Positions 13,406-60,744 of a stretch of DNA of 64,000 nt are shown here, in pieces. Within the stretch, counting starts at the first letter, position 1. Each line of letters begins with the position of its first letter. The DNA is from Takakia lepidozioides (lineage: Eukaryota > Plantae > Bryophyta), in NCBI GenBank assembly GCA_030704615.1, contig CM060733.1, positions 21,948,001 through 22,012,000 of the forward strand, read 5' to 3'. A model generated the notes under the pieces. The model was not told where the DNA came from. It made no database searches and saw only the letters and a list, made by a program, of their open reading frames with translations. The position numbers and the translations under genes are program-made.

Positions 13406-16400
13406 ATGGAGTGTTTGGGTACTGTGATTTCCAACCGCGGTCTCGCGACAAAAGGTTCTACTTATCTCGCCAAGAAAAATGGAATTGCTGCGCGGTGTCC
13501 AAGCGCCTTCTATGCAGACAATGGTGGAAAGACTCTCTCTGTGAAGACGGTCCGTCTGTTGTCGGGGAGCCTCTGCGTGAGTGCTGCTTTAAAGAACCAT
13601 ATTCATTTAGTACTTTCCACCCTTTCCTAGTTTCAGAGAAAGATAGAGGAAGTCTTCGAGGTCCAAGAAAACAACTATTGTCACAAATTGAGTTTGGTTT
13701 TATGAAAGAGATGGGCTTCATGGGCCTTTTCTGTTGGTTGGCGCAAGCGTCAGGTGGAAGAAAGCAAGTGTACTGCAGTGTGGTTGGAAAATGAATTGCT
13801 GAATTTATGAAGGAGATTTGCTTTAGTCGACTTTGGGGGAGAAAGAGAGGGATAGTTCATAGTTACCATTGTCATGGAGAACACACGTCCATAGGGTAGA
13901 CAGAGGATGCGTTTCTATTTTAGTCACGGGAAACACAATTTTTTGGCTCTCCTCTGATTTTCCTTTTGTTTTCTTCATCTAGAGTAGGACAAGTTGTAAA
14001 TGCCTCCAAACTGCAAGCCAAGTATTATTTCAGGGACACGTCTCTGTAGAGTTTCAGGGTTGAGTTGACAATGGTGATGAAACTGAGACCTGAAATTCTC
14101 TATCTTTAATTTCTATCTGTATATCTTAGGCATCTCATTGGTAAGAAACTGGAGTTGGGCTGCAAGGAGGAAAAGAAGCTAGTTCCTTAAGGCTTTCAAA
14201 TAACAAGAAATCCTAAGAGTTGTTTGCATGGTTTATGATAGTTTCTCTGGGCTCAAAGGGGATCTCGGAGGGGGAGATTTTTGTTTGCAGATTGAAAAGG
14301 GATATCAATATGGCAGGAAGCCAGCAATTACTTGCAAGGTACTCAACACAGCTCTGGACACACCGGCTGTTCAAGCCCCAGAGTCCTCTCCAGGTAAGGT
14401 TGGGCAAAGTGACATGGAGACTTTTAAGACGTGCTATAACTCTCTTAAAGGATGCATCTCGGTGCTGTGTAGGGGCAGTTAATTGTCTGGTGGGATGTGG
14501 TTCGGGTGGTTTCTACTCTTTTCCATTCCTGGGTTTAGGGTTTATTCCTCTGCATGTGGGTGTTGGCTGAGAGACATCCAATTATAGACATGGCTTGTAA
14601 CCTGTGCCCTGGCTGGAGAGAGCAGACAGTGTGGAAAGGGGAAAAGGATGAGGATAACAGAATAGGGGAAAGTACCATTGCTGAGGGTTCGCTCCATTAC
14701 TGAGAACTTCCTTTGTAGATGAAGCTGGCTTGTGGGAGGGTGTGATGGATTGGCTTTTAGTCCATGCTTGCCAAATTATTGCGTTTGCTCTCTATCTGCC
14801 ACTGTGCCTCTCTGTAGTAAGCTCTCTGCTACACTCACTGTTGTCTGACTCTCAAGTTGCACTGGTGCGTTTTAGTCACAGCTTGTTCTGACAGTAGCAC
14901 TGCTCTTACATTGTTGGTTTCGTGGAAATGTTTTGATGGACAGAGCGTTTGCAGTTCACGGAGGCCTCGCAAAGGGGCAATCTGGTGCCAGTGTTTCGCC
15001 GCATTTTTTCTGATGGTTTGACTCCAGTGGGGGCGTATCGTTGCCTTGTAAAGGAAGATGACCGTGAAGCTCCCTCTTTCCTGTTTGAGTCTGTTGAGAA
15101 TGGCCCTACTGTCAGCCAGGTGGGTACCGCTCTCCACACCCTGTTTATGATTTGGTGGCTGGCAAGAGCACCATGTTAGAGATTGTCATTGAACCAGGAG
15201 GGTTTATTTCCTGTGCAGCCTATTGCTAGAAGTCTGGGGCATCTCAGCTTCAAAGCTGATCAGAAGCTGTAATGTCCCATTGGCCCTCTGGGCTTCTGGT
15301 GGCTGTACTTCTCTTTTTTAATGCTCATGTGTTCCTTTCTGTGTGTGCATGTCCTGTCAGTACAAATTTTGTCATCAGTCACTCAGCTCGCAATTACCTG
15401 TGCCTGGATTGTGGTCCGCTGTGCCTACTGTGCTGTTCCAAACCTTGAATGGCTCCACAAGGGTTGATATATCCCATGGGGACTATGCCATCATATACAG
15501 GGGCCCTTCATGAGTGCAGTTCTCTGTGTGATATTAGTATTCCCGATCAGCTGGGGGGGAATGGGGAACAGATACAGAAAAGGCCTGGTATCATGTTGTT
15601 AGACCAAAGGTTGGTGCCTCTCTCAGCCTTGGTTCTAGAAACAGATAGACTAGACAAGGGAAGGTGAAGGCTGAATGAGGAGAGGGGTTGTGACAGGGGC
15701 GATACAGCATGGTCGGCGCGCAGCCGTCCATGGAGGTGATAGCCAAGCAGGACTCAGTCACTGTATTGAACCATGAGGAAGGCACCCGGGTGGAGAAAAT
15801 GTCGGATGATCCCATGTCGGAGCCCTCGGAGATTGCATCCCAGTGGCAGCCAGTTAAAGTTGATGGTCTTCCAGATATTTTCTGTGGTATTTGTCGATTC
15901 CATCTTTTCTCTCATGTGTTCTTCTCTCTACCCTAACACGTCACAGGGAGATGTGTGGTTATTTGGTCAGGAACCTGTCTCTAGTTGCTCATCTTTTCTA
16001 GGTCTCTGTGCATCATATGTAGCATGTGGTGTGGTTACACTTGTTGCTAATCTCGGAAAGCTATATTTTTTTGTGGGCCCTATGATACTTAAAACTGGTG
16101 TCAATGGTATTACAGGTGGGTGGGTCGGCTATTTCTCATATGATACGGTGAGGTACACCGAGAGGAAGAAGTTGCCTTTTTCCGGAGCTCCTCAGGACGA
16201 CCGTGGCCTTCCCGACATCCATTTGGGGCTCTATAATGATGTGGTGGTCTTTGACAGTGTGTCCAAGGTTTCATCCATTTACCTGCTCCATTATCTCTTT
16301 GACTCAATGCGGTGTAGATCTTGACTGATCTCTGGCAACAATTTTAGAATCAAGCTGTAAATTCTACCCCTGACATTGGCAAGCTGGCCCAGTCATAAGG

Positions 16401-19400
16401 CAGGATGACTAAGATGAACAGCCCTTGCATTGTGAGAGCGAGATTAACAGCTAGGATGATAGTAGTTCAAAAGGTGCAACATCGATGGAGATACTTTGAA
16501 CCTGTACCACAGACTTCAGGTCCAAAGTCGGTCTTTGAGACCCAGAAACTCATTTCAACCATTGTCCCTCTGGAGCAAAAAGTTGAGTTGCACTGACCTT
16601 GTTTGAAAACATACAAGAGTTTAAAGACACAGATAAATAACTGATGGCAATGGTGTGGATTGTGAGTGACTTGGATGTGGCAGATGGTGTATGTGGTACA
16701 TTGGGTCCACATTGACCGGTTTGACACCCTGGAGCTTGCTTACAAGGATGGGCGGCGCCGGCTGGATCAGTTGGTGGCTCGCCTTCAGTCTGTGGACAGG
16801 TATTTAACATGCCTTCAAAGATGTCAAGAGATGGAATTTTGAGAAATGACATACTTCACTGTAGTATCCATGGTTTTCGTTATTTTAAGGCAGCCAACCT
16901 TTTGTATTAGTAGTATCTTTCAAGGTACTCTCAAAGGTAATAGGTGCAAAATCTCGCAGACCAACTCATCATGCTGGATGGAAAGGACGAGTGTGATGAA
17001 GTCACAAGTGGTAGGATCAAACAGCTGTTGGTAACTAACAGACAAGGGGGGAATGGAAGTTATGGCTCGGCCCAACTCACAAGAACCATTCTGAAGGTTG
17101 AGAGCAGTAAATCTTTGGACTAGGACCTGGTTAATTCTCTAAAGTGCAGGTCCTAGAGAAATTTAAATCTTAGGAAAATTACACATGTACCTAACTTTGT
17201 CTCTTCAATCACTATGTTTGGGTGGGTATTGGCAGACCAAAACTCCCTAGTGGTTCCGTGGACATGTCAATAACGCAATTTGGCCGAGACAAAGGGATTT
17301 CCACATTTACCCGTGATCAGTTCAAGGAAGCGATTTTAAAAGTGAAGGAGCACATTTTGGCAGGTGACATTTTCCAGCTGGTCTTGAGCCAGCGCTTTGA
17401 GCGTCGCACATTTGCTGATCCTTTTGAAGTCTACCGTGCACTTCGCGTTGTGAATCCAAGCCCCTACATGATCTATTTGCAGGTATCTCTCTCTCTACTG
17501 GCTTTAATACTGACTTTTGCGGTGTGTTTACCTCTATGTCTGGAATCTGTCTTGATGCGTCCCTGTGGATGCAATAAGTACTTTAGTTTTGTCTTCCTTC
17601 TGGCCCTCTGTGGCTCTCTACTTTTGTCGCCCTTTTCCCATTGTGACTGGAACTGCATTTGCAGCCACATGTCACATGTCAGCTTTAGAAGTGATCTATA
17701 GTAGCAGTGGTGAACAGTATCTCATGTGTGCTAGTATGTTGTTGTTGCTGCCAGCCCTTAAAATGGCAGTCACAAGTTTTGTTGGCTGTGGGTGAGCAAT
17801 ATGGGAAATTTGGGGTGAAACCAAAACTGTCTCATGAAGTGGGGGCCTATGCTGTCAAGGGTAATTCTTTGTCCTTGACACATAGGCTCTCTAATAGTAA
17901 TTCTTTGTCATTTTCTTGTCTTGCAGCTTGAAGTCTGGCAATGTCTGTTTACCAAAAGAAATTCTTTGTTGAAATTTGGGAGACTAAGAAAGACATCGTG
18001 CCATGCTACTGCAGGCTCGAGGCTCGATATTGGTGGCTTCCAGCCCGGAGATCCTCACTCGCATCACAAAGGTATGCGACCTGTGCTCATAATTGCTTTG
18101 ATTTGTCCGTTAGGCTGGGGATCTTACTTGCATCAATGTAGATGTTCTCCGAGTATCTAGAAAGAGAGGGTAGACAGAAAGAAGAGATGGAACATCAAGA
18201 AGGCTCAATATCACATCCACACGAGGTCAGAGCGAGAGAGAGAAACAAACAGCATCCAATACATCTAGAAAAGTGAAGAGTCTGGGGAGCCAAGCAGAAA
18301 GGAGAGAAATTAGTAGCATCCAGAGAGAGATAGAAGGCGCGCGCACATGATACTTTGTTCACTCCCGTTAGCCTGGCGAATCCTCAGGGGAGCGAAGCGA
18401 AGCCTCGGACCTGGCACATGCAGCGAACGGTTCTTTGGCCCCGCTGCTTTGGTGTTTTTTATGTTGGGGCGAAGCGAACCTGGGGCTCGCTTCCTCACGA
18501 TCACCCCGCTGACATGCACTGGCATGGCGAATTAGCCCCTCTGACGGGCGAATTCGCCACGTTAGGCGCTCATGTGCCCAGCCCTAGAGAGACAGTCTGT
18601 CTGGTTGTCATGGGACCTGAGTGACGGGTGCATGATTCCTTGGTTTAGCAGTTTCCTTGTTAGGTCCTCACTGGACCCAAACCATTTGACTTTTTCGAAT
18701 CCGATACACAGATCCACGCACATATTGTTTGTTATGATTGTCCATAGGGGAAGGTGGTGAACAGGCCGCTAGCTGGGACTCGGAGACGTGGCAAAACAAT
18801 TGAAGAGGACAAAGAGATGGAGCGTGACTTGCTGGCTGATGAGAAAGAGTGTGCCGAGCATGTCATGCTTGTTGACTTGGGCCGTAATGATGTTGGCAAA
18901 GTATGCCACTCTGTTCTTTTCCCATCCTTCCTCCTAATCTATGGTTTCTTTGTGTTTATGTGTCAAATGGTCCATTCTGGTGACATTTTTGGTGCATGGC
19001 TGGTTTTTGTTGCACAAGGACCGGAAAGTTTTGTTGTTCTTTTGCATTTCAGGATTCTGTTACTTCATCAACTTAAACTGGGCTGCTTCAGGAGGTTGTA
19101 AAACATGTAAAGTCTGCATGCGTAGTCCACAGAGAAACTCTACTCTTGTAAAAGAAAGAAAAAGGGCTCACTGGCTCTGCTGCTCATGATAGGCAATTGA
19201 TTAGTGATTCTGTGGCTCACTGCAGAATTTAATAACTTGAAAGCCACTAACTGGGGCTTTTGGAAGAGGGCAGGTGTCAAAGGCCGGGACAGTGAAAGTA
19301 GAGAAGCTGATGGAGATTGAGCGCTTCTCTCATGTGATGCACATTAGTTCCACTGTAAGTTGGTTTCCCTGTCCAGTACTAGTTGTGTGGGGATGTTGGT

Positions 19401-20822
19401 TGTGCTCTGGATCTACATCTGGTGCACGAGTTGAAGCCTTTGGTGGCCACGAGGTATGTGTTTGTGCTTGAACTCCATTTGGGAATCCTTGGGAAGGTTG
19501 GTTGATATTGCTCACTTTATGCTGAACTAGTCAGTCCATTTGCTTGACCAGGTGACAGGTGAGCTGCTGGATGATCTCTCATGCTGGGATGCTCTGCGTG
19601 CTGCATTACCAGTGGGCACGGTTAGTGGGGCTCCCAAGGTGAGTCCCTGCATAAGGTTATGACGGTTTCTGTGAACTGCCACGTTTGCCTGCCTGTGTGG
19701 GGTTGGTCAATTCTGTGAGCATCATCCATGGCTTCCCTCTCCTTTGGAATCTGTTGATGTCATCTATCAATTGCTGTCTATCAGCTTTCTGTCTGTCTAT
19801 CACATCCACTCCCACCCTCTCGTTCTCCCTTATGTGGGTTTCTACACTCCGGAATCTTTAGGCTACCATGATTGATGAATAGGGTTCAGGTTGCCGAGCT
19901 CTATTCTCCATGAGCATATTGAAATTATCTCATAGAACAGGACAGGAGATGATGCAATGCAAAAATGGGTAGGAACCAAGTAGGATACTTGATGCTAAAA
20001 CCCGTGTCATGACATGGCAGGTGAGGGCGATGGAACTCATCGATGAGTTAGAACCCACTCAAAGGGGTCCCTACAGTGGTGGCATTGGTGGGATCTCTTT
20101 CACTGGTGACATGGACTTAGCTTTGGCCCTCCGCACTATGGTGTTCCCTACCCGGCGCACAGACACAATGTACTCATATAAAGATACAAACCATCGCTGT
20201 GAGTGGGTGGTTCATCTCCAGGTATGCCTTTCATGCATCTCAAGCACCGAGTGCCCTGTATCGCATGCTTTTTACTGGTTTTGGGTGGGGGAATACATCA
20301 TTTCCAACAATGACAGGGAATCGGCATTGAGTGCACATCATTACTCATTCCTGTTTCTTTTGATGATCTGGTTGAGTAGCTGTACCTTTCCTAATGAAGT
20401 TGTTCATATCTTTGTATTACGTGCACACTCTTACACAAATGCCTGTTCCTTAATGTCCACAATGACCCAGACACTGAACATCAAGGGAACTTGCATAGTG
20501 ATTGCCTTTGTGCACCTCTCTTTACTGATCACATGCTCTCAAGTGGTTATTGATGTTATTCAGTAAGAGGAAATTATTCTTGTGTCAAGGAAAGTTGATG
20601 TGGTTTCTACCCAATCATAACATCAGAGACACAGAACACTAAATTATGTATGCCCTTGTCATCGTACATCAACAACCTTGTGTGCAATGTCTGCAGGCGG
20701 GTGCAGGCATTGTTGCTGACAGTGATCCAGAGAGTGAGTATCAAGAGTGTGAGAATAAAGCTGCCGGGCTTGGTCGTGCTATCGACCTTGCAGAGTCTGC
20801 CTTTGTGCAAGGAACTCGGTAG
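13406..20822 (+). CDS. ASA: Anthranilate synthase alpha subunit (component I), plastid-targeted, 13 exons, about 619 aa
   Basis: GT-AG exons with consistent phases: 13406-13576, 14291-14393, 14944-15119, 15697-15886, 16116-16267, 16684-16799, 17236-17482, 18015-18071, 18748-18900, 19274-19354, 19552-19638, 20021-20221, 20697-20822 (1860 nt). Motifs: [79 protein letters not shown]. The first two exons (transit peptide) are less certain. Confidence 0.95.
18337..18584. mobile_element. Putative small MITE in an ASA intron
   Basis: GC-rich insert with imperfect inverted ends (GCGCACATGA ... TCATGTGCCC) and GCGAA subrepeats; no clear TSD. Confidence 0.35.
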
Positions 20823-22644
20823 TTTTCTTGTAGTTCCATGGAAGTTCCTCTGTACACATTTTCCTTTGAATCCTTGGCTCTATTCCAGTGTATACTGTTG
20901 GAGCCATGAAATTTGGATAAAAACAGTAGTGCCTCGCATATTTCGTGTGGTTTGTACACATGCTGATTCACAGTTCTGAAAGTCAGAAAAGGCGGTTCAC
21001 TGGACATTGAGCTATCTTTTTAGGCACTTCCTAGAGTGTTGATGTTGGAGAGGGTTGGATGGTAGAAGCAGACAAATGGGCTGCTGGGGCATTCAGCTCA
21101 GGATATTACTTTTTTGGTACTTCAATGAAGGCCCACGATTGAGAAATTTCTTTTGATGAACGTCTCAAACTGAAGACAGCTCCACTCCTATTTTCTGGTT
21201 TGTTTCTGTCGTTGATTATAATATGATGTCTTTTGCCATTGAGCTCTTATCACCAGATCTGTCCAAATGAGGCCTTTCTTTCTTCTTCCTTCACTCTCCC
21301 AGCTGTCCTTGCTGGCAACTCATATTTCCCTTTTATTCCCATGTGGTACTCTAACACTGGATACTATAGCACCTCTAACATATCTTGATAAAGTAGAAAC
21401 AGCGCATGAACCTTTTCTATCCCTGAAAATAGGCTCTGTAAATTCACTGGATGTAAAAGAATCTTTATCTTTTATCTTTTATCCCTGAATAAAGAGGGCT
21501 TCAACATGTAATCAGGGCCACCACTAGTTAGGCTAATATCTGTGGTAAGTTGTGGGTCATTGCATTGAACATTTTGCATCCATGAAGTGAATGTCCTTGT
21601 TATTCTTTCTTTATGTGATTTTTGAAGTTTATCTCTCTTATTCTCTAGATCTGCTATATTTTGCATCCACCTTCGGTTGCATCCATGAACTCTTTTCCCA
21701 GGTTTTCCCCAAATTTTCCATCATACTTTATGCGTAGTTCTATAATATTCTTCCATACAGTGAGGGTGATAGTAGCAAAAGGAAAGGATGCAATCAGTAT
21801 TAAAACGAGTTAGTCCAAGCACCACCAAAAGTTCGAATCGGTCAAACCATAGGTTGTCCACCACTGCAAACTCATCAGTAACACAATCCAGCGTAGTATG
21901 TGGTTGTGTGGGCTGGATTATACACGCACGGTTAGCAGAGCGATGCTTCAGACTGAGACTGATCGTCCAGGTGGTAATCTTCAAGCTGATACTGATGTGT
22001 AGCGTTTAGGCACAGCTCTACAGTACTGTGTTGGAGCTGTGTTACAGTACTGTGTTGCAGGGCATTTGACTATGTCTTTCAAGGACCATCTGGGAAGCGT
22101 AACTAATACTGGAGCACATGTGATTAACGTTTACTGAATCACAGATCATGTCTAACTTTTGGTAATCCGCCAATTGGCCACCACCACTTTGAGTACTTTT
22201 GTCTAAGCAGTGCAATACAGTACCTGACTTTGTCCAGTCTGCCACATCAAGATTGCATGTTATGGATGTCCAACCATTTAAGGTGGTGCTTCATAGTGTT
22301 GCATCCTACCTGAGTTGCTCTCATGACTCTCTGAATTGCTAATTTCTTCAGTGAATTTTAGACATGCATGCAACAGTCGCAACTTTCTGAGAACTTTCTT
22401 CTCCAGCGACTTCAATTTGATATTGGCAGGCAGCCAAGTGGTGAGAAGCTGTACTTGTGGAATCTGATAATCAGCTCCCAGCAGCACTAAAGAAGCTGCC
22501 AATTGACAGGCATCTCGCAATCGCAGAATGTGAGGAAAGTGGTCACAGAGGCTGATGGGTACCAGGGCTCCACATCTCATTGCTCCTGAGCAAGACTACA
22601 GACGGTGCACATTTATGTGAAACAAAATTCAACATTGCCGTAAT

Positions 22645-22692
22645 GAATTATCCCATATCGTTTGCCCGGCTTCCGCAGGACTCGTATAAGTA
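22645..22692 (+). promoter_or_regulatory. snRNA-type (type 3 Pol III) promoter: USE + TATA
   Basis: TCCCATATCG (22651-22660) matches the plant USE consensus RTCCCACATCG with one mismatch; TATAAGTA starts at 22685, a 24-nt spacer that fits the short Pol III-type spacing. Confidence 0.85.
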
Positions 22693-22711
22693 CTAAAACC
22701 AGGCAAAGTGA

Positions 22712-22975
22712 AATATCCTTGAGGGACCCGGCCAGGCGTGGGGTCGGCCGCGAGGGTAGCGGGCAGGCTCGTACCCAAAACCCTAAACTTGTGAGGGCAG
22801 AAGGCAGGGAGGGAGGGGGTTGATCCGGGGCTTACCCCAAAAATACAAAGCACCGACGCCTGCCGCCCCGCGACTGCGCTGCGTGTGGCACGCGCGGGGT
22901 TGCGAGTCTCGTGTCTGTACGCACAGTGGTTCGCCGCGCTCGCATCGAGTCCCGTGTGCTCGGTCGCCTCCTTTT
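22712..22975 (+). ncRNA. TR: Telomerase RNA (TR) gene, candidate, about 260 nt (5' end estimated from the TATA position)
   Basis: Template AAACCCTAAAC at 22778-22788. Hairpin GGGTA-GCGGG-CAGG-CTCG-TACCC (22754-22776) directly 5' of the template. Pseudoknot: GGGGT 22816-20 pairs ACCCC 22834-38; CGGGGCTT 22826-33 pairs AAGCACCG 22848-55. P1: GAGGGACC 22721-28 pairs GGTCGCCTC 22962-70. TTTT at 22972-75. Its 3'-of-template sequence recurs at telomeric junctions at 37344, 40282 and 47321. Confidence 0.88.
22972..22975 (+). terminator. Pol III T-run terminator (putative)
   Basis: TTTT directly after the 3' strand of the P1 helix. Confidence 0.6.
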
Positions 22976-23008
22976 CTCTATCACACTCTAAGTTACTGTA
23001 TTTGAGCG

Positions 23009-23034
23009 AGAGAGAGAGAGAGAGAGAGAGAGAG
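23009..23034 (+). repeat. (GA)n microsatellite
   Basis: Direct reading. Confidence 0.95.
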
Positions 23035-24578
23035 CAGTGCAGGTAACACTCGCGATCCAAAATTGACAAGAGTGGGACTCTGCTGTGAGCTGATCTACGA
23101 GTGAGGACGTTTCAATGTGTTTAAATCTCTTAGACCAATTGGAACTGTCAGTTGACCTCTTCAGTTGAAGATAGGATTCCCTCTTGCTACTTGTCGTTAA
23201 CTCGTTTCATTGCAATACCTGGTAAGTATTAGATGGATAAAACGATACAAAGCTGGGCAGCCAAAAGAGTTCAGCTTCTGCTATAAAGCAACTGCTTACA
23301 AATAGTTCACCAAAGCGGGAGTTCTTGCTCTATCTCGATCTGCAGCTCATATGCTGTGTCCACATTGCATTTGCGTGAACTGCGTACCATCATTTGGGGT
23401 GCCAATCGAGTTTGGGATAGTGCCATTCGAATAGAGTCAGTTCTTAGGCACATGCCTGATGACGATTTCATAAAGGAGCTCCAAAAGGAGATAGAGAAAG
23501 CAACCAGGTGTATCCGGACCATCTTTCACGGCCGAGTGTATTAGAAGTGCAACCCTATTCTGGGCGACTGGCCACAAGTTCGTTGTTGATGGTGGCCATA
23601 CAACCAACAAGAGCAACTCCTTTATCGAGAGCTTATGCAACCTGAACTGTACTGCCCTATTGTTGCCAAGTGTGTGGATCAATATCTTCAGCTTAGTATT
23701 TTGTCCACAAGTTGGCTGTTGAGGCTGCGTCTCTCCTTGTCCACCACCTTCAAACTTCACAACCTTCCGCAGCTACAAGGTGTAGAGCTGCAAGGTGGAG
23801 GGATTGAGGATTGTCCATAGGGTGCCGGCTAGCCCAGACTTAGCAAGCATATGCGTCAGGGTAAAAGCTAGATTTAATTTTGTGAGCGGCGTTCCTTTTG
23901 CTTAAAGTCTTCGCCAACTGGAAAACTGACGTGTCAGGTATGGAATACCAAATGAGCACTTCCATGTCCAATAAACGTTGCCTCATTTCGAGTAAACTTT
24001 GCTTCATTTCACTAGTGTGACTGTGTACTGAACAAAAGAATCTTCTTAAAAGATATCTGGGAATGTCTCGGCTCCACTAGTTCGACTAATTATTGAACAA
24101 AAGCACGTTTCAATTTTTTTTTACAGGATTAAGAATCGTTTAGTGAGCCATGTTGTATTGGAAATGAGCATTTGGCCTTCTAAGGGTGCCGTTTGACCCA
24201 AAAACCATGCATCATTAATTAACTCATCCACTAAACTCATCCACTAGTGTGATTGTTTAGACAACACTTGTTGGTTAAACATGATGTTTGGAAGTGGACG
24301 TTTGGCCTTCTAAGAGCGCGGTTCAACCATTAATCATGTTCCACTAAACCATCCATTAATTGTTTCCAAGTGTGCCGTTAGACCATTAAATCGTGCATCA
24401 TTAAACCAAGTCTCATTAAATTATGCTCTATAGTGAGCCACTATTTGTTGGAAATGAGGCAAAGTTTATTGGAAGTGAGACAAACTTTTGGAAGCGAGGC
24501 AAAGTTTATTGAAAATGAAAGTGGTCATTTGGCTTTCCAAGTGCACCGTTAGACCATTAAATCATGCATCACTAACCC

Positions 24579-33402: not shown

Positions 33403-34599
33403 ATGATGTTAGCTGCAACTTCTGAACCTTCTTCTTCCAAGCGTCCTAGGATAGAGATGAATAGTGATGGTGCTCCTGCAGAAGATCGACCGTCTTATTC
33501 GCCTCCAAGGGATTTATCTCCTACTCCAAGGCCGCAAGTTGGGATCTTTTTCAACCAGAATGATCATTCTCCAGACTTTGTGGATGCTATTCGCAAGTTG
33601 TTGGACAACTCTCTGGCGCAGTACAAGAAGGATTTCAAGAGACTTCAACGTCTCAAGGCAACTTCCGACAAACTCAGATCTCAAAAAGCTGCCGGTGAAA
33701 TTCCTCATGCTTGTAGAGTTGCTTGTCCGAAGTTGGTCATCTCTTCTGCCTCTGTCCAGACGTCTTTGGATGCTACTGTCCTAGCAGCCACTGTTGCTTA
33801 CCATTCAGCTTTGCAAACAGCTTTTATTCAAGCTCATTCCGATCTGGTACAAGAAGCTGAAGCTGTTTTGAGCAAATCCTCTGATGTTTTCATTGCTCGA
33901 CTCAGGGAGATCAACTTGCATGTGGATGTATCTTCTTGCACAGACCAGATTCAGGATTCTTCTTGGCTCTTTGATGAGCTTGACTTTGTGTGCACTCAAG
34001 CCACTACAGCCTGGTATGCCGGAATTTCTTGCTTTCGCGCCAACCACAACCTCGGTACTGCAGTGAGGGATAAGGCGTTACATGAAAGGAACCAAGCTAG
34101 AGATCAGGCCATGGCAGATGCTGATGTTCTTCCTACTGAGCCTACCATTGCCGAGCTAGTAAGGAAAGAGGTGCAGAAACAACTTTCCCACTCACGAAAG
34201 AAAACTTCTCTCTCTCCTACTCGCCCTAAGCAACATCAACGAGCGCGTTCTTCCTCTCCTAACCACAAGAGGCGACAACAGCGTGGCCGCTCACCTGCTC
34301 GACGAGTCTCCAAGACTCAACCTACCAGCCGAGGCACTTCAGCAAAAGCCAAGGTAACTTCCTCCAAGGCAAACTCTTCAAAGCAGCAGGGAAATGGCCA
34401 ACAGCGGAATGGGACTGCTCGCACCCGTTTCGCTGCATCGCGTTCATCTTCTCCGAGCAAATCCGCCCTACGTTCTCAGACCCGTTCTGGTTCTGGACAA
34501 CAAAAGTCGGGGCAAAACCAACAACAGAAGCTCAAGAAGAAGGTCACATGGGCAGATCCAAGCCGAAGAGAGCTCGCAAGCTCTTCTGGTGGCCGTTGA
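33403..34599 (+). CDS. PLE ORF1 (predicted helical/coiled-coil protein with a basic Ser/Arg-rich tail)
   Basis: 398-aa open frame directly after the 5' pLTR; overlaps the RT frame in -1. Confidence 0.75.
   Translation: MMLAATSEPSSSKRPRIEMNSDGAPAEDRPSYSPPRDLSPTPRPQVGIFFNQNDHSPDFVDAIRKLLDNSLAQYKKDFKRLQRLKATSDKLRSQKAAGEIPHACRVACPKLVISSASVQTSLDATVLAATVAYHSALQTAFIQAHSDLVQEAEAVLSKSSDVFIARLREINLHVDVSSCTDQIQDSSWLFDELDFVCTQATTAWYAGISCFRANHNLGTAVRDKALHERNQARDQAMADADVLPTEPTIAELVRKEVQKQLSHSRKKTSLSPTRPKQHQRARSSSPNHKRRQQRGRSPARRVSKTQPTSRGTSAKAKVTSSKANSSKQQGNGQQRNGTARTRFAASRSSSPSKSALRSQTRSGSGQQKSGQNQQQKLKKKVTWADPSRRELASSSGGR
34389..34459 (+). promoter_or_regulatory. -1 programmed ribosomal frameshift signal (slippery heptamer + H-type pseudoknot)
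   Basis: G GGA AAT at 34389-95 in the ORF1 frame; 6-nt spacer; 12-bp stem 34402-13 / 34424-35; loop TGCTCG (34416-21) complementary to CGAGCA (34454-59). Confidence 0.8.
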
Positions 34600-36455
34600 G
34601 GGATGTAGAAGGCTATAAGCTTTATCTTTTTTCTTGCAAGAGAGTCTCTCAGGCAGAGAACAGGTTAACCAACGTGGCCATCCACAACGTGGCCAATCGT
34701 CCACTCTCTTGTTTTGAAAAGAAGCTTTTAGGCCTAGGTTTGAGTTTTATTCCTCATCCTACTCCTCCTTCTCCCTCTTCTATTCTTGATGCTTATGACT
34801 CTTTGGCTCAATCTTTACGTCTTCGATATCACTTCAGGGATGCTAGAGATACACCCATTCCTCCTTTCAGAGTTCCTCAACCTTCTTGGGATCAGTGTGT
34901 GCGACTTCCTGCTTTGGAAAGCATTATCATCGAGGGTCGCAACATTGTAGAGACTCGGTTAAGGGAGGTGGCTCGCTCTGCCTACAGGTCTTCTATTCGA
35001 GGTCACCTCAAGACTGCGATACGCTGTCTGAGCAGAGATGAGTCCATCGTCATCAAGCCAGCAGACAAAAATCTTGGGTTGGTGATCATGCGGAAGGACT
35101 GGTATGTGGATGAGGGACACCGCCAACTCCACGATGGACAAGTTTACGAATCCGTGGCAGAGATCCCATTTGACAATCTCGCATATGGTTTGGATGCATT
35201 GCTCGCTTCCGCTCTCTTGTTTGGATTGATTGACAGGCAGACAAGGGACTTTTTGGCGCTCAAGCCCCAAGGGGGCTACCGACCCTGCATGTTTTATCTC
35301 GTGCCCAAAATGCACAAGCCTGTGGTGGTTGGGAGGCCGATTTGTTCATACAACGGATATGTTTTTGAGCACGCATCCAAGTGGTTGCATCACCATCTGT
35401 TTCCCATTCTGCTCGAGGAAGATAACCATTTGATAGATTCTATATCTTTGTTGAAAGATCTGTCGGATAGGCAACTTCCTGGCGACGTGCTTTTGTTCAC
35501 CTTTGATGTGGAGTCATTGTATCCTAGCATTCCTACTGGGGACGGGCTTCGACGATTGAAGGAGATGATTGCCGGCAAGCTCAAGTCACCTCAGTTTGAA
35601 AGATTCGTCCTGAGTCTTTCTCGCATGGTGTTGGAGAATAACTATCTTCAATTTGGCTCCAGCTATTGGCATCAGATCCGAGGCACGGCAATGGGTAGCA
35701 ACTTTGCTGTTGTTTATGCTTGTCTCTTTCTTTGCAGCTTAGAAAGAGAGTTGGCTGGTGCTGGAGGAGGCATGTGGCCTCTATACTACAAGAGATACAT
35801 CGATGATGGATTTGGAATTTGGGCAGGATCTCGGGCAAGTTTGGAGGCTTGGCTCGATGGATACAACTCTCTTAGTCCCACAATTCGGATTCAAAGGGTA
35901 ATCTCTGAGTCTACGGTTGACATTCTTGATATTCAGTTCTTCAAGGGAGCTGATTTTGTCAACCATGGGATTTTATCTTCGAGATGTCATCAAAAGGCAC
36001 TCAACAGATACCAGTATTTGCCATGGACCTCGTGTCATCCACGACACCAAAAACGAGCATTCATCATTGGCGAATTACGACGTTACACTTTGAGGGAGAG
36101 CACACGGGCAGGTTTTTCTGAGATCAGGCAACTGTTCTATGAGCGACTGCGTGCTCGAGGCTATCCAAAGTCTTTTATCTTGGAGTGTTTTGTGCTTTGT
36201 GACTATGCACAACGTGCTACACTGTTGACTTCAGAGTCCACTCGTAAGTTGACGGGCAAGCGGGCCCCCTTGGTTTTGAAACTTGAGCATTCGCGTTATA
36301 CTCAAGCTCTAAGCTTTGAGGGAGTCCTAAACCCTAAACTTCATGAGGGCTTTTTGAAAGTTCCGCAGTTAGTGTCTTTTGACAGACCTATGGTATGTTG
36401 GAAGAGGGCACGGAACTTGCGTTCCTATCTAGTTCGTGCTATGTTACAAATCTAG
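34548..36455 (+). CDS. PLE reverse transcriptase without GIY-YIG endonuclease; probably made as a -1 frameshift fusion with ORF1
   Basis: PLE motifs IKPADKNLGLV, YLVPKMHK, GRPI, FTFDVESLYPSIP, QIRGTAMGS, YKRYIDDGFGIW, SCHP...KRAFIIGELRRY, RARGYP. Ends at RNLRSYLVRAMLQI* with no Cys linker or GIY-YIG domain. The frame is open upstream to at least 34323. Confidence 0.93.
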   Translation: MGRSKPKRARKLFWWPLRDVEGYKLYLFSCKRVSQAENRLTNVAIHNVANRPLSCFEKKLLGLGLSFIPHPTPPSPSSILDAYDSLAQSLRLRYHFRDARDTPIPPFRVPQPSWDQCVRLPALESIIIEGRNIVETRLREVARSAYRSSIRGHLKTAIRCLSRDESIVIKPADKNLGLVIMRKDWYVDEGHRQLHDGQVYESVAEIPFDNLAYGLDALLASALLFGLIDRQTRDFLALKPQGGYRPCMFYLVPKMHKPVVVGRPICSYNGYVFEHASKWLHHHLFPILLEEDNHLIDSISLLKDLSDRQLPGDVLLFTFDVESLYPSIPTGDGLRRLKEMIAGKLKSPQFERFVLSLSRMVLENNYLQFGSSYWHQIRGTAMGSNFAVVYACLFLCSLERELAGAGGGMWPLYYKRYIDDGFGIWAGSRASLEAWLDGYNSLSPTIRIQRVISESTVDILDIQFFKGADFVNHGILSSRCHQKALNRYQYLPWTSCHPRHQKRAFIIGELRRYTLRESTRAGFSEIRQLFYERLRARGYPKSFILECFVLCDYAQRATLLTSESTRKLTGKRAPLVLKLEHSRYTQALSFEGVLNPKLHEGFLKVPQLVSFDRPMVCWKRARNLRSYLVRAMLQI

Positions 36456-37317: not shown

Positions 37318-37468
37318 TAAACCCTAAACCCTAAACCCTAAACTTGTGAGGCCCCCCTAAAACTTGTTTGCCCGGATCGTGTTTATCTTGCACCCGGTGC
37401 CTCCGCGTTGTACTGCTACACTTGTTTTGACGCTTTATGTGAACCCTAAACCCTAAACACTAAACTTG
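37318..37468 (+). repeat. Telomeric tract, TR-like linker, family B 3'-end fragment, telomeric tract
   Basis: (AAACCCT)3 to 37343; TTGTGAGG 37344-51; family B end 37350-37441; telomeric repeats 37442-37465. Confidence 0.85.
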
Positions 37469-38684
37469 AGCGATGATTTGTTGGAGGAATCCGCGAAAGC
37501 TGAGTTCATTCCTAGTTAAATCTAGAATGATAGGATGATTTTGTAGTGCAAATGTCCCTAGCATTATTAATTTTGCCTCTTTGATAGCCCTAGTGTTGAT
37601 GTTAAAGTCAAATGGTTCCAACAATTAATTTGGACCATTGACTAATTAATGCAGTCTTGACTTGGAGGCTAAATTAGTGCTTTAGTGGCATTATTATTGC
37701 CTTGGGAATTATCCCATATCGTTTGCACATAGTGAGGGTGCTTTTCTAGTATATAAGGATAGGCTTGGCTCTTAGGACTTCATCTCTTGGTGTTCCACTG
37801 ATGAGCTTGAGCAATCAAGCGAAACTTGTTTGGAATAAAACACCTTAACTCTTTTTGTGTCTCCACACTTAGAGAAGTCGAGAGTCTAGTCCTTGCCCGT
37901 CCGGGCAACTTGGATCGAAGGGGTGCTCGGCTCTGAGGGGAATCCCAACCCTTGGATACTTCCGAGGCCTTTTTTCTTTCCGAAGCACGGGCGTATAGAA
38001 CCTTCCGTTTGACGCCATCTTAGCCACCGCTTACAATGGGGAAGGCGGCTGGGGGTATATAGTAATCGTGTCGGGCAAGCTAATTTAGCCCCAACTACAC
38101 GGTTCCCCCTGTCGTACGCCCGATGGTCGGAGAGAAGGGATTTGGTTGATCCTCCCTCGAGTTCATCTCGAGCGATCAGAGAACTATGGGCATGCGCAAG
38201 TCTCTGCCGACCTAACCTTCTCGTCGATGACCTTATGCGGTAATCCCTCCCATTCTTCCTTAGAGGTACGAACCTCTTTTTGAAGGTGGGGCATATAAGT
38301 TTTCCAACTAGGGGTTGAGACTTGACCCTATGTTTGTGAGTGCCTTGAGCGCATGCTTGCCCATAGTGAGCAAGATTTTTGTCGCTAAACAAGGAGAAGC
38401 AAACATAAAAAAGCTTATGGTTGGAGCGAAAGTGCCTCATTCTTCAATTAGAGAACCTTATCTCGTGAGGGCGGGAGTCGTTGCATAAGACATAATAGTC
38501 TTATAGCATCCCTTTAGGCACGATAGGCGCACTTTGTATGCATTTGTCTTGGTTTCCATTGCATTTGTATTTGGGTCCTAACCGGCCCCCCTTAAAATTT
38601 ACTGTGTCTTTTTCCAGTATTTTTTCTACTTTTTGTTACCTTTGCAAGCCTTTGTTGACCACCCTAAACCCTAAACCCTAAACC
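37469..38684 (+). mobile_element. PLE family C, 5'-truncated (RT C-terminus + pLTR), ending in a telomeric tract
   Basis: Starts with a frame encoding AMICWRNPRKLSSFLVKSRMIG*, homologous to family A PMVCWKRARNLRSYLVRAMLQI*; USE at 37712-21; TATA at 37750; hammerhead; (ACCCTAA)n at 38661-38684. Confidence 0.8.
37789..37844 (+). ncRNA. Minimal hammerhead ribozyme (family C)
   Basis: TTCCA-CTGATGA-GCTTGA(GCAA)TCAAGC-GAAAC-TT-GTT-TGGAA; stem I extends through GGTGT/ACACC. Confidence 0.88.
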
Positions 38685-40281
38685 GTTTGTATCCCCTGCT
38701 TTAGATCGTTGCATTGTTATGTGCTCTGTGTCTATACGGCATGCCATAAACTCCCTCTCGAGTAGTGTATGGGAGATCTGCATCTAAGTTGTTCCCAGTG
38801 TGTCCATTCTCTTGCAAAACAGAGATAGGGTTCTTATTCTCCTGTGCATCCAGCGAAATAGTTCTCATACGCACATTTGCCTCTTGCATAGGTTTGCAGT
38901 TGCATTTCAGGACACCTCGCATACTTCTATTCTAGTTTCCTGTCTCTCAGGATCTCTCCTTTCAGGTTTGATTCACAGGATCTGAAATTTTTCCAGGGGT
39001 GCATAACTGGCCCCCCTAAAACTTGTTTGCCCGGATCGTGTTTATCTTGCACCCGGTGCATCCGCGTTGTACTGCTACACTTGTTTTGATGCTTTATGTG
39101 AACCCTAAACTTTCTTATAGTGTTAGCTGCAACACATCTTTAATCGCCTTCACGTAATGGAGGCAGATGTTGATCTTCATTCTTTTGACCAAGCTGCTCA
39201 TTCATGTGATGAGGCAACAATACGAAGACCGAGCCGTGTTTCTTCTTGGAGGTCGGAAGGTGGGGATCGTGGTTGGACACGTTCGGGACAACAGAGCTGC
39301 AGGCTTTAGCAAGACGATGGTTGCGCGATGGTCTGCGTGTGCAAAGCTCTTACGAGTTGTGCGTTCCTTTTGAAGTGGTTTCAGCCCTTACGACTTTGCA
39401 CAACATGCTCTAACTTCAGCATAATTGGTTGTTGCATAGTCATAAACTCACGGAGTTAGTTGTATTTGAGAGATATGCAATTGACTATTTGGATGATTTT
39501 TATTCTTTGGATCTAGTTCTCTCTTGTCGAGAACTTGTTTTCATCCACTGGATGACTTTCTCCCACCGAGACTTTTTGGACTATTCTCTCCGTACGAGAC
39601 GTCTGTTGGATGGTTTTTCTCCTCACGAGACATCTACTGGAAGATTGTCCACACGAGGCAGTTCACTCCTAGTAGTATATAAGCGGGGGGTGGGGTTTGT
39701 ATCTCATTCCTTTTCTTTCCCACTGATGAGCTCACGCGCTGAGCGAAACTAGTCTGGGGTCTATAAAGATTTGGCTTCGCTACTTTGCATGATCTTGCCT
39801 CGTGGTCTCACCCTTTGAAGTTGTCGAGTTTTAGATGCATTTGTATCCCCTGCTTTAGATCATTGCATTGTTATGTGCTCTGTGTCTATACGGCATGCCA
39901 TAAACTCCCTCTCGAGTAGTGCATGTGAGATCTGCATCTAAGTTGTTCCTAGTGTGTCCATTCTTTTGCAAAACAGAGATAGGGTTCTTATTCTCCTGTG
40001 CATCCAGCGAAATAGTTCTCATACGCACATTTTGTCTCTTGCATAGGTTTGCAGTTGCATTTCAGGACACCTCGCATACTTCTATTCTAGTTTCCTGTCT
40101 CTCAGGATCTCTCCTTTCAGGTTTGATTCACAGGATCTGAAATTTTTCCAGGGGTGCATAACTGGCCCCCCCCTAAAACTTGTTTGCCCGGATCGTGTTT
40201 ATCTTGCACCCGGTGCATCCGCGTTGTACTGCTACACTTGTTTTGATGCTTTATGTGAACCCTAAACCCTAAACCCTAAAC
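38685..40281 (+). mobile_element. PLE family B, non-autonomous unit of about 1155 bp in partial tandem, ending in a telomeric tract
   Basis: 38685-39110 repeats at ~39840-40267 (period about 1155); homologous to the family A pLTR; only ~350 bp internal sequence and no RT; (AACCCTA)n at 40258-40281. Confidence 0.82.
39717..39760 (+). ncRNA. Minimal hammerhead ribozyme (family B, GUC cleavage triplet)
   Basis: TTCCCA-CTGATGA-GCTCACGCGCTGAGC-GAAAC-TA-GTC-TGGGG. Confidence 0.9.
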
Positions 40282-42241
40282 TTGTGAGGGCAGGCTCTTC
40301 CATTTCCCGCACTGGCAAATGACCTACTGTTGTGTTTGCCTGCAATCTTTCTTATTCATGAAGCAGCGGCGCTCATAAGGTGATGGGGGAAGTATCATGC
40401 ACTTTGTAAATATGCACTTTCTCCTCAAGTATCCCAATTTGTTGCATTCTGCTGTGATCTCTTGAGATTCAGGTGTTGAATGTCACAGCGTCCCACTCCA
40501 CAAACGATCAAAGTTCTCTGTGGTGTCGCATCTATGTTTTACTTTTGATCAGTTTGCTCACTGTAGAATGCATGTTGGACATGGATAGCAACTGTGAAGA
40601 CCTGCTACTCACCTCGTGCATCCTCACTAACACACATCTTGATGTGGTGGTTTTTGGGACGGGCACAGGTGAGGGTCTTCACTCGATGTGTATTTTTTCA
40701 GTTTGCAGATGATCAAAGGACTTGGCGATGGTGACGATTGACGCTACATACTGCTTCAGTGGGGCATCCGATACGATTCGGCCTCTCAACCTTAATCCTT
40801 TTTGGGTTTTATGGGTTGTAACCTGATTATAAGTCAGTTTTCTGGTATGATACCAGTCTGATCTTTGGCACCATATTAGTGAGGTTTTCAACCTGATTGT
40901 AAATCAGTTTTCTGGCATGATACCAGTCTGAGCTTCGGCTGCATTTTGATATGGTGCTGGAGTACCATCTCCAGACCTTATAAGGCTATCCAATGATGCT
41001 TAAGATAGGCCTTCTCATGCTGATTTAACACGGTAAGTACCAAGCGGTCCTTTTTTACCATTGAGGTCAGAGTTCTAAATTTAAAATAGCCCCGGTTACA
41101 CTGTTTTAACTTAGAGATTACCAAGCAGCTGGCGTGATGGGCTTTTCAGATTACATAACACTTGTTTTAAGGTTGCCAAGCGATGCCATTGGAACCATCC
41201 TTTGAATTTGAAACAGGTTCAGTTTTACTATGTTAACTTGGAAAGTACCAAGTTGTACTTGACTTGGAAGAATACCAAGCAGTGGTCTTGTTGGGCTTTT
41301 TCAAAATACATAGGGGCTGGTTTAACTTATCGAACTACCTTTTGGAATACCCTTTGAGCTGGTGTTGTCTATAAAGTTATGATTATGCTCATTGTAGCAC
41401 TCCACTCTGATTGAGTTTTGGAGAGATGATTGGAAAACCAGATCCAGACCTTTTGTGCATTCATGGAACATAGAAATAGCATGCTGGCTGGTCTACATTA
41501 TCAGGCTGGGCTCTTGGAATTGCAACACCTGCAACTCATTCTTAAAGGCTCAAGTGTTTATGCTGATCTGGTATGTACCCCAAAATGATGCCAAAAAACA
41601 GCATCATGAGCGGTCGCAAGTAATAGTTGTTGCAGTAAGGCGATTTGATCCTCGATGATGATCATACCTTGGCCAGGGGACAACGACGCAATGGCGTGAG
41701 CACGTGAGCGCGTGCTCACGCAGGAGTGACGTGGCGTGAGCGTGCACCCACGCTGACGTGGCGTGAGCGTGATGTCATCAGGTTGACATGGCGGCAAATG
41801 CTGACGTGACACTGTATCCCCATCTGCCACGTCAACATGAACATGTGGCGCCTATAACCGAGGATGGTCCTATGACCATGGGATTAATGCAAAGAATCAT
41901 TACCTGAATAAAAGATGATTGTAGTGCATAACGACAGGAGAACATGTAGACTTCAAAAGGAGCAATGATGCATGTGCTTTTAAAAGTTGCCACTGAGACC
42001 TCACTGAGTATAGTTCGAAGCATAATGGAGGGATAAGGGATGCCATATCATTGCACCAACTACGATATTGCAAATGAATTGAATTGAATTGAATTTCCAT
42101 GACAATGTTGCAAATTGCACAGTTCATATGGTCGTCCACACACCAGATTGCATACTCATAGTCCATAAAAAGCACATTTCAGATTGCACATTCCAGATTG
42201 CACATTCACCACATTCCAGATACACGAAATGATAGTTGATG

Positions 42242-45498: not shown

Positions 45499-46688
45499 GA
45501 TGTGTTACAGCTAACACTGTAAGAAAGTTTAGGGTTCACATAAAGCGTCAAAACAAGTGTAGCAGTACAACGCGGATGCACCGGGTGCAAGATAAACACG
45601 ATCCGGGCTAACAAGTTTTAGGGGGTCAGTTATGCACCCCTGGAAAATTTTCAGATTCTTGTGAATCAAACCTGAAAATGAGAGATCCTGAGAGACAGGA
45701 AACTAGAAGGGTTTAGGATTTTTAGGGTTTAGGGTGGTCAACAAAGGCTTGCAAAGGTAATAAAAAACAGAAAAAATACTGGAAAAAGACACAGTAAATT
45801 TTAAGGGGGGCCGGTTCGGACCCAAATACAAATGCAATGGAAACCAAGACAAATGCATACAAAGTGCGCCTATCGTGCCTAAAGGGATGCTATAAGACTA
45901 TTATGTCTTATGCAAGGACTCCCGCCCTCACGAGATAAAGTTCTCTAATTGAAGAATGAGGCACTTTCGCTCCAACCGTAAGCTTTTTTATGTTTGCTTC
46001 TCTTTGTTTAGCGACAAAAATCTTGCTCACTATGGGCAAGCATGCGCTCAAGGCACTCACAAACATAGGGTCAAGTCTCAACCCCTAGTTGGAAAACTTG
46101 TATGCCCCACCTTCAAGTTTAGGGTTTGGGGTTTGGGGTTTATGGGTTTAGGGTTAGGGCCTACAAAAGAGTGGAAACAGATACATGTAGCAGTGCAACA
46201 GAGTTCGAACCGCGAATGCACCGGGTGCATTAGTAGCAAAGTGCAAACAAGTTTTTAGGGGGGCCAGTTATGGACACCTTAGAAAACTTGTAGAAATATC
46301 TAGCCTGTGAATCAAAACTAAAAGAATCGATCCTGAGACACAGAAAACTAGAATAGAACAGAGTGGGAGTGATGTTGCAACGTTCTAAAGTGCAAATGCA
46401 AAGATATGCAAGAGGCAAGTGTGTGTGATGAAACTAATTCACTGTAAGGACATGAGAATAGTAACCTATCTCTAAGAAAGAGAATAGACACACTAAAGAA
46501 CAGTCTTAGAAGGAGATCTAACATGCAACACTCGAAAATGAGTTTAAAACATGCACTACAATAGACACAAAACAAATGAATGCAATGAACTATGCAGAAG
46601 ATCAAATCTAAAACTCAACAACAACAACAACGCCGCCAATGAGACAAAGAGACAAGAACACAAGATGCAGCAAAGCGAATCTCTATAA

Positions 46689-46732: not shown

Positions 46733-47957
46733 AGAGAAGGAAAAGAGATACAATGTGTACCCCTCACCCCGCTTATATACTGCGGAAAGTGAACTTGTCT
46801 GGGGGGGGAGAGAAAATACCTAATGGATGGAAAACATCCAAAATTGTCTTGGCTGGAGAGATCGTCCAACACATGAAAACTTAGATGAAAAACATCCAAA
46901 GTTTTTTCGGTAGCGGAGAAATATCCAACGCATGAAAATCTAGATATAAAACATCCTAATGATCTCTCCAAAATGGATAATCATCCAAACTAGAAGCTAA
47001 CTGCATATCTCAAATACAACTAGCCTCTAGATTTGTAACATAGCACGAACTAGATAGGAACGCAAGTTCCGTGCCCTCTTCCAACATACCATAGGTCTGT
47101 CAAAGGACGCTAACTAGGAAATTTCAAAAAGCCCTCATGAAGTTTAGGGTTTAGGACACCCTCAAAGCTTAGAGCTTGAGTATAATGCGAATGCTCAAGT
47201 TTCAGAACCAAGAGGGCCCGCTTGCCCGTCAACTTACGAGTGGACTCTGAAGTCAACAGTGTAGCACGTTGTGCATAGTCACAAAGCACAAAATATTCCA
47301 AGATAAAAGACTTTGGATAGCCTCACAAGTTTAGGGTTTACGGTTTAGGGTTTACGGTTTTTTAGGGTTTTAGGGTTTAGGGTTTAGGGGTTTAAGAAAA
47401 GGGTTTTTGTTTTTGTTTTTATTTTTGTTTTTTTAGGGTTTAGGGGTTTAGGGTTTAGGGTTCACATAAAGCGTCAAAACAAGTGTAGCAGTACAATGCG
47501 GATGCACCGGGTGCAAGATAAACACGATCCGGGCAAACAAGTTTTAGGAGGGCCAGTTATGCACCCCTGGAAAAATTTCAGATCCTGTGAATCAAACCTG
47601 AAAGGAGAGATCCTAAGAGACAGGAAACTAGAATAGAAGTATGCGAGGTGTCCTGAAATGCAACTGCAAACCTATGCAAGAGACAAAATGTGCGTATGAG
47701 AACTATTTCGCTGGATGCACAGGAGAATAAGAACCCTATCTCTGTTTTGCAAAAGAATGGACACACTAGGAACAACTTAGATGCAGATGTCACATGCACT
47801 ACTCGAGAGGGAGTTTATGGCATGCCGTATAGACACAAAGCACATAACAATGCAATGATCTAAAGCGGGGGATACAAACGCATCTAAAACTCGACAACTT
47901 CAAAGGGTGAGACCACGAGGCAAGATCATGCAAAGTAGTGAAGCCAAATCTTTATAG

Positions 47958-59987: not shown

Positions 59988-60744
59988 ATGGAAGTCGAAG
60001 TGAAGCTGAGGCTGCCTGATGCAGCTGCACATGAAAAGGTTGCTTTGTTATTGGCCCCAACACATGAGGTCACATACCAGCAGGAGAACATCTTCTTCGA
60101 TGGCTCCACCCAAGAATTGAGGTCACAAAGGTCAGTGCTCCGACTGCGATTCTACAACGGCGACGTGCGCTGTGTGGTCACGCTCAAGGGAAAAGCTGTC
60201 GTTGTGGATGGCATCAGTCGGGCAAAAGAGGTGAGACTCGCTTGGAACTCGTGCATTCTCATTTCTTACAAGCAAACATGCGGAGGTACTGGAATAAAAG
60301 TCCAAAGTACTGTCTCTTGTGGAGTTGTGGAGATGGGTTGTGTAAATCGGTATAACTTCTGTCAACTTCTGACAGGTGGAGGAGGACATCGACTCAGCCC
60401 TGGGAAGAGCATGTGTGGCAGACCCATCTCGATTGGCTGGTATAGGTGGCAAGCTGATCCAACATGTGGTGTCTCAGTACAATTGCCGAGACTTTGTGTG
60501 CCTCGGAGGTTTCAGAAACGTCCGTAATGTGTATAGCTGGGAAGGGCTTAAACTGGAACTGGATGAGACCCAGTATGCTTTTGGGACCACTTACGAGATT
60601 GAGTGCGAGACCACGGAGCCAGAAAAGTTTCGGCAGCTGTTGGGTGAGCTTTTGAACGCAAGTGGGATTCCATACTCCTATTCTACAATCACCAAGTTCG
60701 GTGTATTTAGATCTGGGAAAATACCCACCTTGACTGGAGCTTGA
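59988..60744 (+). CDS. TTM3: CYTH-domain triphosphate tunnel metalloenzyme (TTM3-like), 2 exons
   Basis: MEVEVKLRL (ExExK motif), QENIFFDG, LRLRFY, LELDETQYAFGTTYEIECE; exons 59988-60230 and 60376-60744. Confidence 0.9.

What the first reader, a model, noticed from the sequence alone, without database searches (positions are those of the whole stretch)
22645..22975. Unannotated telomerase RNA gene about 1.9 kb downstream of anthranilate synthase
Seen in sequence: USE TCCCATATCG, a 24-nt spacer and a TATA box; a ~260-nt GC-rich unit ending in TTTT; an 11-nt template AAACCCTAAAC (1.5 repeats, complementary to TTTAGGG); a hairpin just 5' of the template; a two-stem pseudoknot just 3'; and pairing between the 5' and 3' ends. 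Established: land-plant TRs are Pol III transcripts from USE-TATA promoters with this template-pseudoknot layout. From recall, the blocks GGGGGT..CCGG..TTACCCC AAA..CCGAC..TGCC resemble angiosperm TRs. Inference: this is the TR of this species. Protein-based annotation would miss it.
Basis: partly seen in the sequence, partly recalled or inferred. Interest (0 to 1): 0.92.

Follow-up and report, generated by a model that had tools for sequence, protein, structure and literature searches.

The report
Bryophyte telomerase RNA with genomic footprints
This is very probably the gene for the RNA that templates telomere synthesis in a moss or liverwort; nearby repaired DNA breaks carry copied pieces of it, which is direct sequence evidence that the RNA has been used, though the gene class itself is well known.

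Summary
The anatomy is real: USE, 24-nt spacer (plant Pol III spacing), TATA, a ~260-nt 65% GC unit ending at the first T4, a hairpin abutting the telomere template, and a possible pseudoknot. Alone this is only moderate evidence: Penelope-like elements (PLEs) spread both the USE word and telomere words through this window, and the folds are weakly significant (9/1000 shuffles). The strongest evidence lies elsewhere. Three telomeric tracts under PLE insertions continue into 8, 8 and 12 nt identical to the bases just 3' of this template (P about 2e-12). In two cases unfilled copies of the target show 6 and 4 of those bases were added, not pre-existing. So this RNA was reverse-transcribed while TTTAGGG repeats were made. 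DNA depth fits one or two copies, not a SINE. Not obtained: any homolog, covariance-model hit, covariation or transcript (the two RNA runs cover the neighbour mRNA, not this unit). Verdict: new member of the known land-plant TR class in a bryophyte (0.9). The scan had noted the linker on other DNA of this genome; my look-ups returned no other TR gene.

The parts
22651..22660 (+). USE of a type-3 snRNA promoter; its 21-nt context 22645-22665 is identical to USEs in PLE repeats at 37706 and 49907(-)
22685..22692 (+). TATA box, 24 nt after the USE (Pol III spacing 23-24 bp in PMC8287931)
22712..22975 (+). Predicted telomerase RNA, about 255-265 nt; start inferred at 22710-22721; 65% GC, CpG o/e 1.04 against 0.58 for the window
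   Evidence: start site is inference
22721..22728 (+). 5' strand of closing stem (P1a-like), pairs with 22962-22970
   Evidence: 60/1000 shuffles as strong
22733..22739 (+). Candidate P1c 5' strand, 7 Watson-Crick pairs with 22856-22862; competes with 22803-08/22859-64, unresolved
22754..22776 (+). P1.1-like template-boundary hairpin; natural variant T22772C keeps it by shifting the bulge (-12 against -10 kcal/mol; A or G would weaken it)
22778..22788 (+). Template, 1.5 repeats, for TTTAGGG
22789..22800 (+). Bases 3' of the template that are copied into healed junctions elsewhere
22816..22855 (+). Pseudoknot: P2 22816-20/22834-38, U-containing 5-nt loop, P3 22826-33/22848-55, A-rich 9-nt loop
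   Evidence: geometry compared; no covariation data
22869..22904 (+). Long 3' hairpin (P4-P6-like by position only)
22972..22975 (+). T4 Pol III terminator, first T4 after the TATA box
37319..37351 (+). Footprint 1: 3.5 telomere repeats, then 8 nt of TR flank; 6 nt absent from unfilled target copies, GG microhomology
40258..40293 (+). Footprint 2: about 3.5 repeats, then 12 nt of TR flank; no unfilled copy in the window
47321..47353 (-). Footprint 3: repeats, then 8 nt of TR flank on a broken PLE RT copy; 4 nt added, GAGG microhomology
46114..46130 (-). Tract joined at a 3-nt microhomology (TTG, already in the target) to the first bases 3' of the template
14943..20822 (+). Neighbour gene: anthranilate synthase alpha (matched exons to stop codon); its mRNA contigs end near 21134-21176, before the TR

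Best explanation
The locus is this bryophyte's telomerase RNA gene. The USE and TATA box 24 nt apart recruit Pol III (inferred from published spacing), giving a non-polyadenylated RNA of about 260 nt ending at T4 (inferred). With TERT, a telomere end anneals to the 3' part of the template and is extended to the hairpin at 22754-76, which stops copying, giving TTTAGGG (inferred; no tract in the window reads into the hairpin). At broken DNA ends, a 2-4 nt match lets the end anneal further 3', at 22789-22800. The intervening TR bases are copied once, then repeats are added (copied bases shown at two junctions; the enzyme is inferred). Endonuclease-less PLEs then prime on the new G-rich overhang, which preserves the healed end inside the chromosome (follows from PMC8557442).
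For: Promoter, size and terminator fit the class. Hairpin and pseudoknot geometry fit published bryophyte TRs: about 5-bp G/C-rich P2, 7-12 bp P3, U in the first loop. Three of 17 tract ends match the flank for 8 or more nt, P about 2e-12. Unfilled copies show added bases. Element-internal telomere seeds are about 1.5 repeats and lack the linker, while junctions have extra repeats. The main unit in tracts is CCCTAAA, 23 of 34, with no 5' read-through. The body is unique in the window. DNA depth is 94 against 59-78 in neighbouring contigs, while repeats reach thousands. Natural variant keeps the hairpin.
Against: No homolog found: Rfam has no match, motif scans gave only chance hits, no synteny in moss-like AS loci. 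No transcript: zero depth over 22749-23142 in two RNA runs that do cover the spliced AS mRNA; library type is not on record, and poly(A) sets normally miss TRs. The first pseudoknot loop is 5 nt against 6-8 published, and P1c is ambiguous. Depth is up to about 1.5 times the neighbours, so a second copy is not excluded.
Confidence: 0.9

Rival explanations
1. The locus is a silent or redundant TR paralog; the footprints were templated by a near-identical copy elsewhere.
For: Depth over the unit is somewhat above neighbours and contigs break at 22573/22611 and 22944. TR duplication and transposition are common in plants. No transcript seen.
Against: Promoter, template, stems and terminator are intact. 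Depth tracks GC content across contigs in run X1 (5.9 to 17.7). My look-ups in the scan's notes returned no second TR gene (weak evidence).
Confidence: 0.05
2. The unit is a PLE-derived or SINE-like Pol III RNA with a telomere-complementary priming site, not TR.
For: The 21-nt USE context is identical to that in PLE repeats. PLEs here carry the same 11-mer. The PLE RT frame has a word resembling template plus flank at 36326-36350.
Against: No hammerhead and no other similarity to the PLEs. PLE USEs have 28-29 nt spacing or no TATA, and two lead to hammerheads. Near single-copy depth. Junction linkers match this locus exactly and differ from the PLE word, which encodes a conserved LNPK(L) peptide.
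Confidence: 0.03
3. Chance assembly of common words in a GC-rich island.
For: Each word is common here; global folding z is 0.03.
Against: Cannot explain three junctions matching the flank for 8-12 nt with added bases.
Confidence: 0.02

Closest known systems
Bryophyte and land-plant telomerase RNAs (Fajkus 2019 PMC6765143; Fajkus 2021 PMC8287931: 11 moss and 12 liverwort TRs, Physcomitrium knockout)
   Same: USE-TATA type-3 promoter at Pol III spacing, about 260 nt, T-run terminator, P1.1 hairpin 5' of the template, short G/C-rich P2 and longer P3, 5'-3' end pairing.
   Different: Sequence homology not tested; GC-rich rather than AT-rich 3' part; first loop 5 nt; P1c unresolved.
Vertebrate TERC-ITS loci (PMC2246262, PMC8537989)
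   Same: Interstitial telomeric tracts preceded by a few bases copied from the 3' side of the template (8 of 14 mouse loci; one Xenopus locus), with microhomology at the break.
   Different: Plant; no inverted distal TR fragment; here the tracts are capped by Penelope-like elements. I found no plant report in the searchable papers.
Endonuclease-less PLEs, Athena and Coprina type (described in PMC8557442)
   Same: Neighbouring elements have RT without endonuclease, hammerheads and reverse-complement telomere seeds, and attach to telomeric overhangs.
   Different: They are the recorders of TR activity here, not the source of the locus.

Membership tests
Land-plant telomerase RNA | Type-3 promoter: USE and TATA at Pol III spacing (23-24 bp) | tested here: met
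   24 nt
Land-plant telomerase RNA | Template of at least one repeat plus 1 nt matching the species' telomere repeat | tested here: met
   11 nt; CCCTAAA is the main unit of the window's interstitial tracts; true chromosome ends not seen
Land-plant telomerase RNA | T-run terminator, length about 260 nt | tested here: met
   first T4 at 22972; start site inferred
Land-plant telomerase RNA | P1.1 template-boundary hairpin (non-seed plants, gymnosperms) | tested here: met
   9 bp, kept by a natural variant, no read-through in tracts; alone not significant (159/1000)
Land-plant telomerase RNA | P2/P3 pseudoknot supported by conservation or covariation | tested here: inconclusive
   geometry possible, 92/1000 shuffles, no homologs for covariation
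Land-plant telomerase RNA | P1c closing the core, P4-P6 stem, three-way junction | tested here: inconclusive
   competing pairings
Land-plant telomerase RNA | Homology to known TRs by covariance model | not testable with these tools
   no Rfam match; published models and sequences not held; no homolog fetched
Land-plant telomerase RNA | Transcribed as a non-poly(A) RNA | tested here: inconclusive
   no contig in two small RNA runs of unknown library type
Land-plant telomerase RNA | Templates telomere repeat synthesis | tested here: met
   indirect: its 3'-of-template bases are copied in front of repeats at three junctions; enzyme not identified
Land-plant telomerase RNA | Reconstitutes activity with TERT; loss shortens telomeres | not testable with these tools
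   needs bench work
SINE or PLE-derived repeat | Many dispersed copies | tested here: not met
   depth 94 against 59-78 for single-copy neighbours and thousands for repeats
SINE or PLE-derived repeat | Hammerhead or sequence shared with PLE bodies | tested here: not met

The most novel reading that the evidence does not exclude
The linker and first repeats under the PLE insertions were made by the Penelope-like reverse transcriptase itself, a TERT relative, which anneals a broken end to the host telomerase RNA, copies through the template and then jumps to its own RNA. A retroelement would then be borrowing TR to make its own landing site. All footprints in this window sit under PLE insertions, but that is also expected if only PLE-capped healed ends survive inside chromosomes, and the extra in-register repeats fit TERT better.
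Probability: 0.1. Interest if true: 0.85.

Novelty: new member of a known kind. Interest (0 to 1): 0.47.

Why it matters
A TR for one more bryophyte is routine. The added value is that the genome records the RNA in use: bases 3' of the template are copied into healed breaks, up to 12 nt beyond the normal alignment region. That validates the gene without an experiment and shows that this stretch is open to priming in the working enzyme. It gives a plant parallel to vertebrate TERC-ITS loci, which I did not find reported in the searchable papers. It also suggests a cheap way to find or check TR genes in any genome rich in telomere-targeting PLEs: read the recurrent linker at tract ends and look for it behind a USE-TATA promoter. 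It makes a clear test possible of whether telomerase or the PLE enzyme makes these junctions.

Tried and rejected
Rfam at gathering and E-value thresholds: nothing relevant. Template-plus-pseudoknot motif scan: 8 hits in 596 Gb of prokaryote genomes as background and 28 in metagenomes, none with promoter and full template; the motif was chosen with help from my memory of angiosperm TRs. Synteny: AS loci L039-L054 and TTM3 loci L037-L038 from other plants hold no USE-TATA-template unit and no BLAST or nhmmer hit; TR synteny is lost even within a genus, so this is uninformative. RNA runs: no coverage. The 146-codon minus-strand ORF over the unit has no Pfam match and was rejected. AS 3' UTR reading rejected: mRNA contigs end 1.5 kb upstream. 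PLE loci of Selaginella (L055) and L056 show no recurrent linker in the short stretches held. The PLE in-frame word resembling template plus flank was rejected as the linker source. Species not identified.

Full report
Organism and setting. The window is from a bryophyte: the two exons of a TTM3 gene at 59988-60729 are 72-78% identical to moss proteins, and exon 2 only 54-60% to vascular plants and algae. No named liverwort or hornwort protein was among the comparators, so moss or liverwort is open; unchecked scan notes say liverwort. The neighbour is anthranilate synthase alpha, stop codon 20820-22. From 32.7 to 50 kb lie Penelope-like elements (PLEs): the RT at 34548-36455 has relatives in Selaginella and Cryptomeria, with hammerhead cores and short telomere seeds.

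Observation. Published Arabidopsis spacing is 23-24 bp for Pol III and 32-34 bp for Pol II (PMC8287931). The unit is 65% GC with CpG o/e 1.04, against 42-47% GC in the flanks and CpG o/e 0.58 window-wide.

How much is chance. The USE word occurs five times exactly and the template 11-mer 21 times in the window. The other four USEs have 28-29 nt spacing or no TATA box, and two lead to hammerheads. Global folding is no better than shuffles. The hairpin and pseudoknot together are matched by 9 of 1000 shuffles, the end pairing by 60, with criteria set after the fact. The geometry does fit published bryophyte TRs, apart from a 5-nt first loop and an unresolved P1c.

Footprints. Of 17 telomere-like tract ends elsewhere in the window, three continue into the bases directly 3' of this template: 8 nt at 37344, 12 nt at 40282 and 8 nt at 47328 on the minus strand. 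Chance is about 2e-12, treating ends as independent. The sequence beyond the match differs at each, so they are separate events. For two the unfilled target is in the window. At 37344 five other copies of the target share at most the last GG, so six bases were added. At 47328 the intact PLE shares only GAGG, so four were added. At 46116 the tract joins at a TTG already in the target, equal to the first three flank bases. Element-internal seeds have about 1.5 repeats and no linker; junctions have extra repeats. No tract reads into the sequence 5' of the template, and CCCTAAA is 23 of 34 units. The simplest reading: a broken 3' end annealed to the RNA 3' of the template by 2-4 nt, the intervening bases were copied, repeats were added, and a PLE then primed on the new overhang (PLE behaviour from PMC8557442). 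The copied bases are shown; the enzyme and order are inferred. I noted this match before opening the scan's notes, which hold the same idea for this window and a CTCACAAG linker 20 Mb away; that word is the reverse complement of 22788-22795. Those notes are leads, not support.

Copy number, variation, expression. In DNA run X2 the contig over 22611-22944 has depth 94 against 59-78 for neighbours and thousands for repeats; in X1 depth follows GC content. This excludes a SINE family and fits one, at most two, copies. Both runs (one sample) read C at 22772; this swaps an A-U pair for a G-C pair by moving the bulge and strengthens the hairpin, whereas A or G would weaken it. It is one variant, so suggestive only. 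Two small RNA runs cover the spliced AS mRNA, ending near 21134-21176, and have no contig over the unit. Their library type is not recorded and poly(A) sets usually miss TRs, so this is neither support nor refutation.

Homology. None obtained. Rfam gave no match, motif scans only background, and AS or TTM3 loci of other plants no syntenic unit. Published TR sequences and models were not available. Membership therefore rests on promoter, template, terminator, hairpin and footprints; covariance-model homology, covariation and transcription remain untested or inconclusive.

Comparison and verdict. It works like, and meets every defining feature that could be decided here for, a land-plant TR (PMC6765143, PMC8287931). 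Moss and liverwort TRs are already described, so the gene is a new member of a known kind. The footprints parallel mouse and Xenopus TERC-ITS loci, where repeats are preceded by bases from the 3' side of the template; I found no plant case in the searchable papers, which is a limited search. Confidence in functional TR 0.9; silent paralog 0.05; PLE-derived RNA 0.03; chance 0.02. Interest 0.47, raised above routine by the footprints.

Noticed in passing
window 37706-37830 (+) and 49907-49785 (-): PLE repeats carry a USE whose 21-nt context is identical to the TR promoter, then a TATA box at 28 nt and a hammerhead core; the spacing is between the Pol III and Pol II values. Promoter capture from TR or an snRNA gene is possible but untested.
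   Followed up: partly
window 62449-62711: 118-nt direct repeat with a USE in each copy (62538, 62683); the first has a TATA box at 29 nt, the second none. Class unknown.
   Followed up: no
window 36326-36350 and 47155-47131 (-): The PLE RT frame holds a telomere-like word followed by bases resembling the TR flank (one mismatch, one indel). It encodes LNPK(L), conserved in distant PLE RTs including Selaginella (L055:11615), so the likeness may be coincidence or mimicry.
   Followed up: partly
window 19636-20694: The runs guessed to be DNA show exon-exon joints of the AS gene and two substitutions (20155, 20170): a processed AS retrocopy elsewhere, or RNA in those runs.
   Followed up: no
window 22035-22564: A diverged copy of this stretch, lacking 386 nt, exists elsewhere and appears in the RNA runs.
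   Followed up: no
window 21430-21472: Very high-copy short repeat (depth above 19,000 in X2) between the AS gene and the TR.
   Followed up: no
window 51858-52913 (-): 351-codon ORF with no Pfam match.
   Followed up: no
L043:10209-10237, L046:10209: Moss-like AS loci have a 2.5-3.5-repeat telomeric tract at the start of the intron after the searched exon, polymorphic in length.
   Followed up: no
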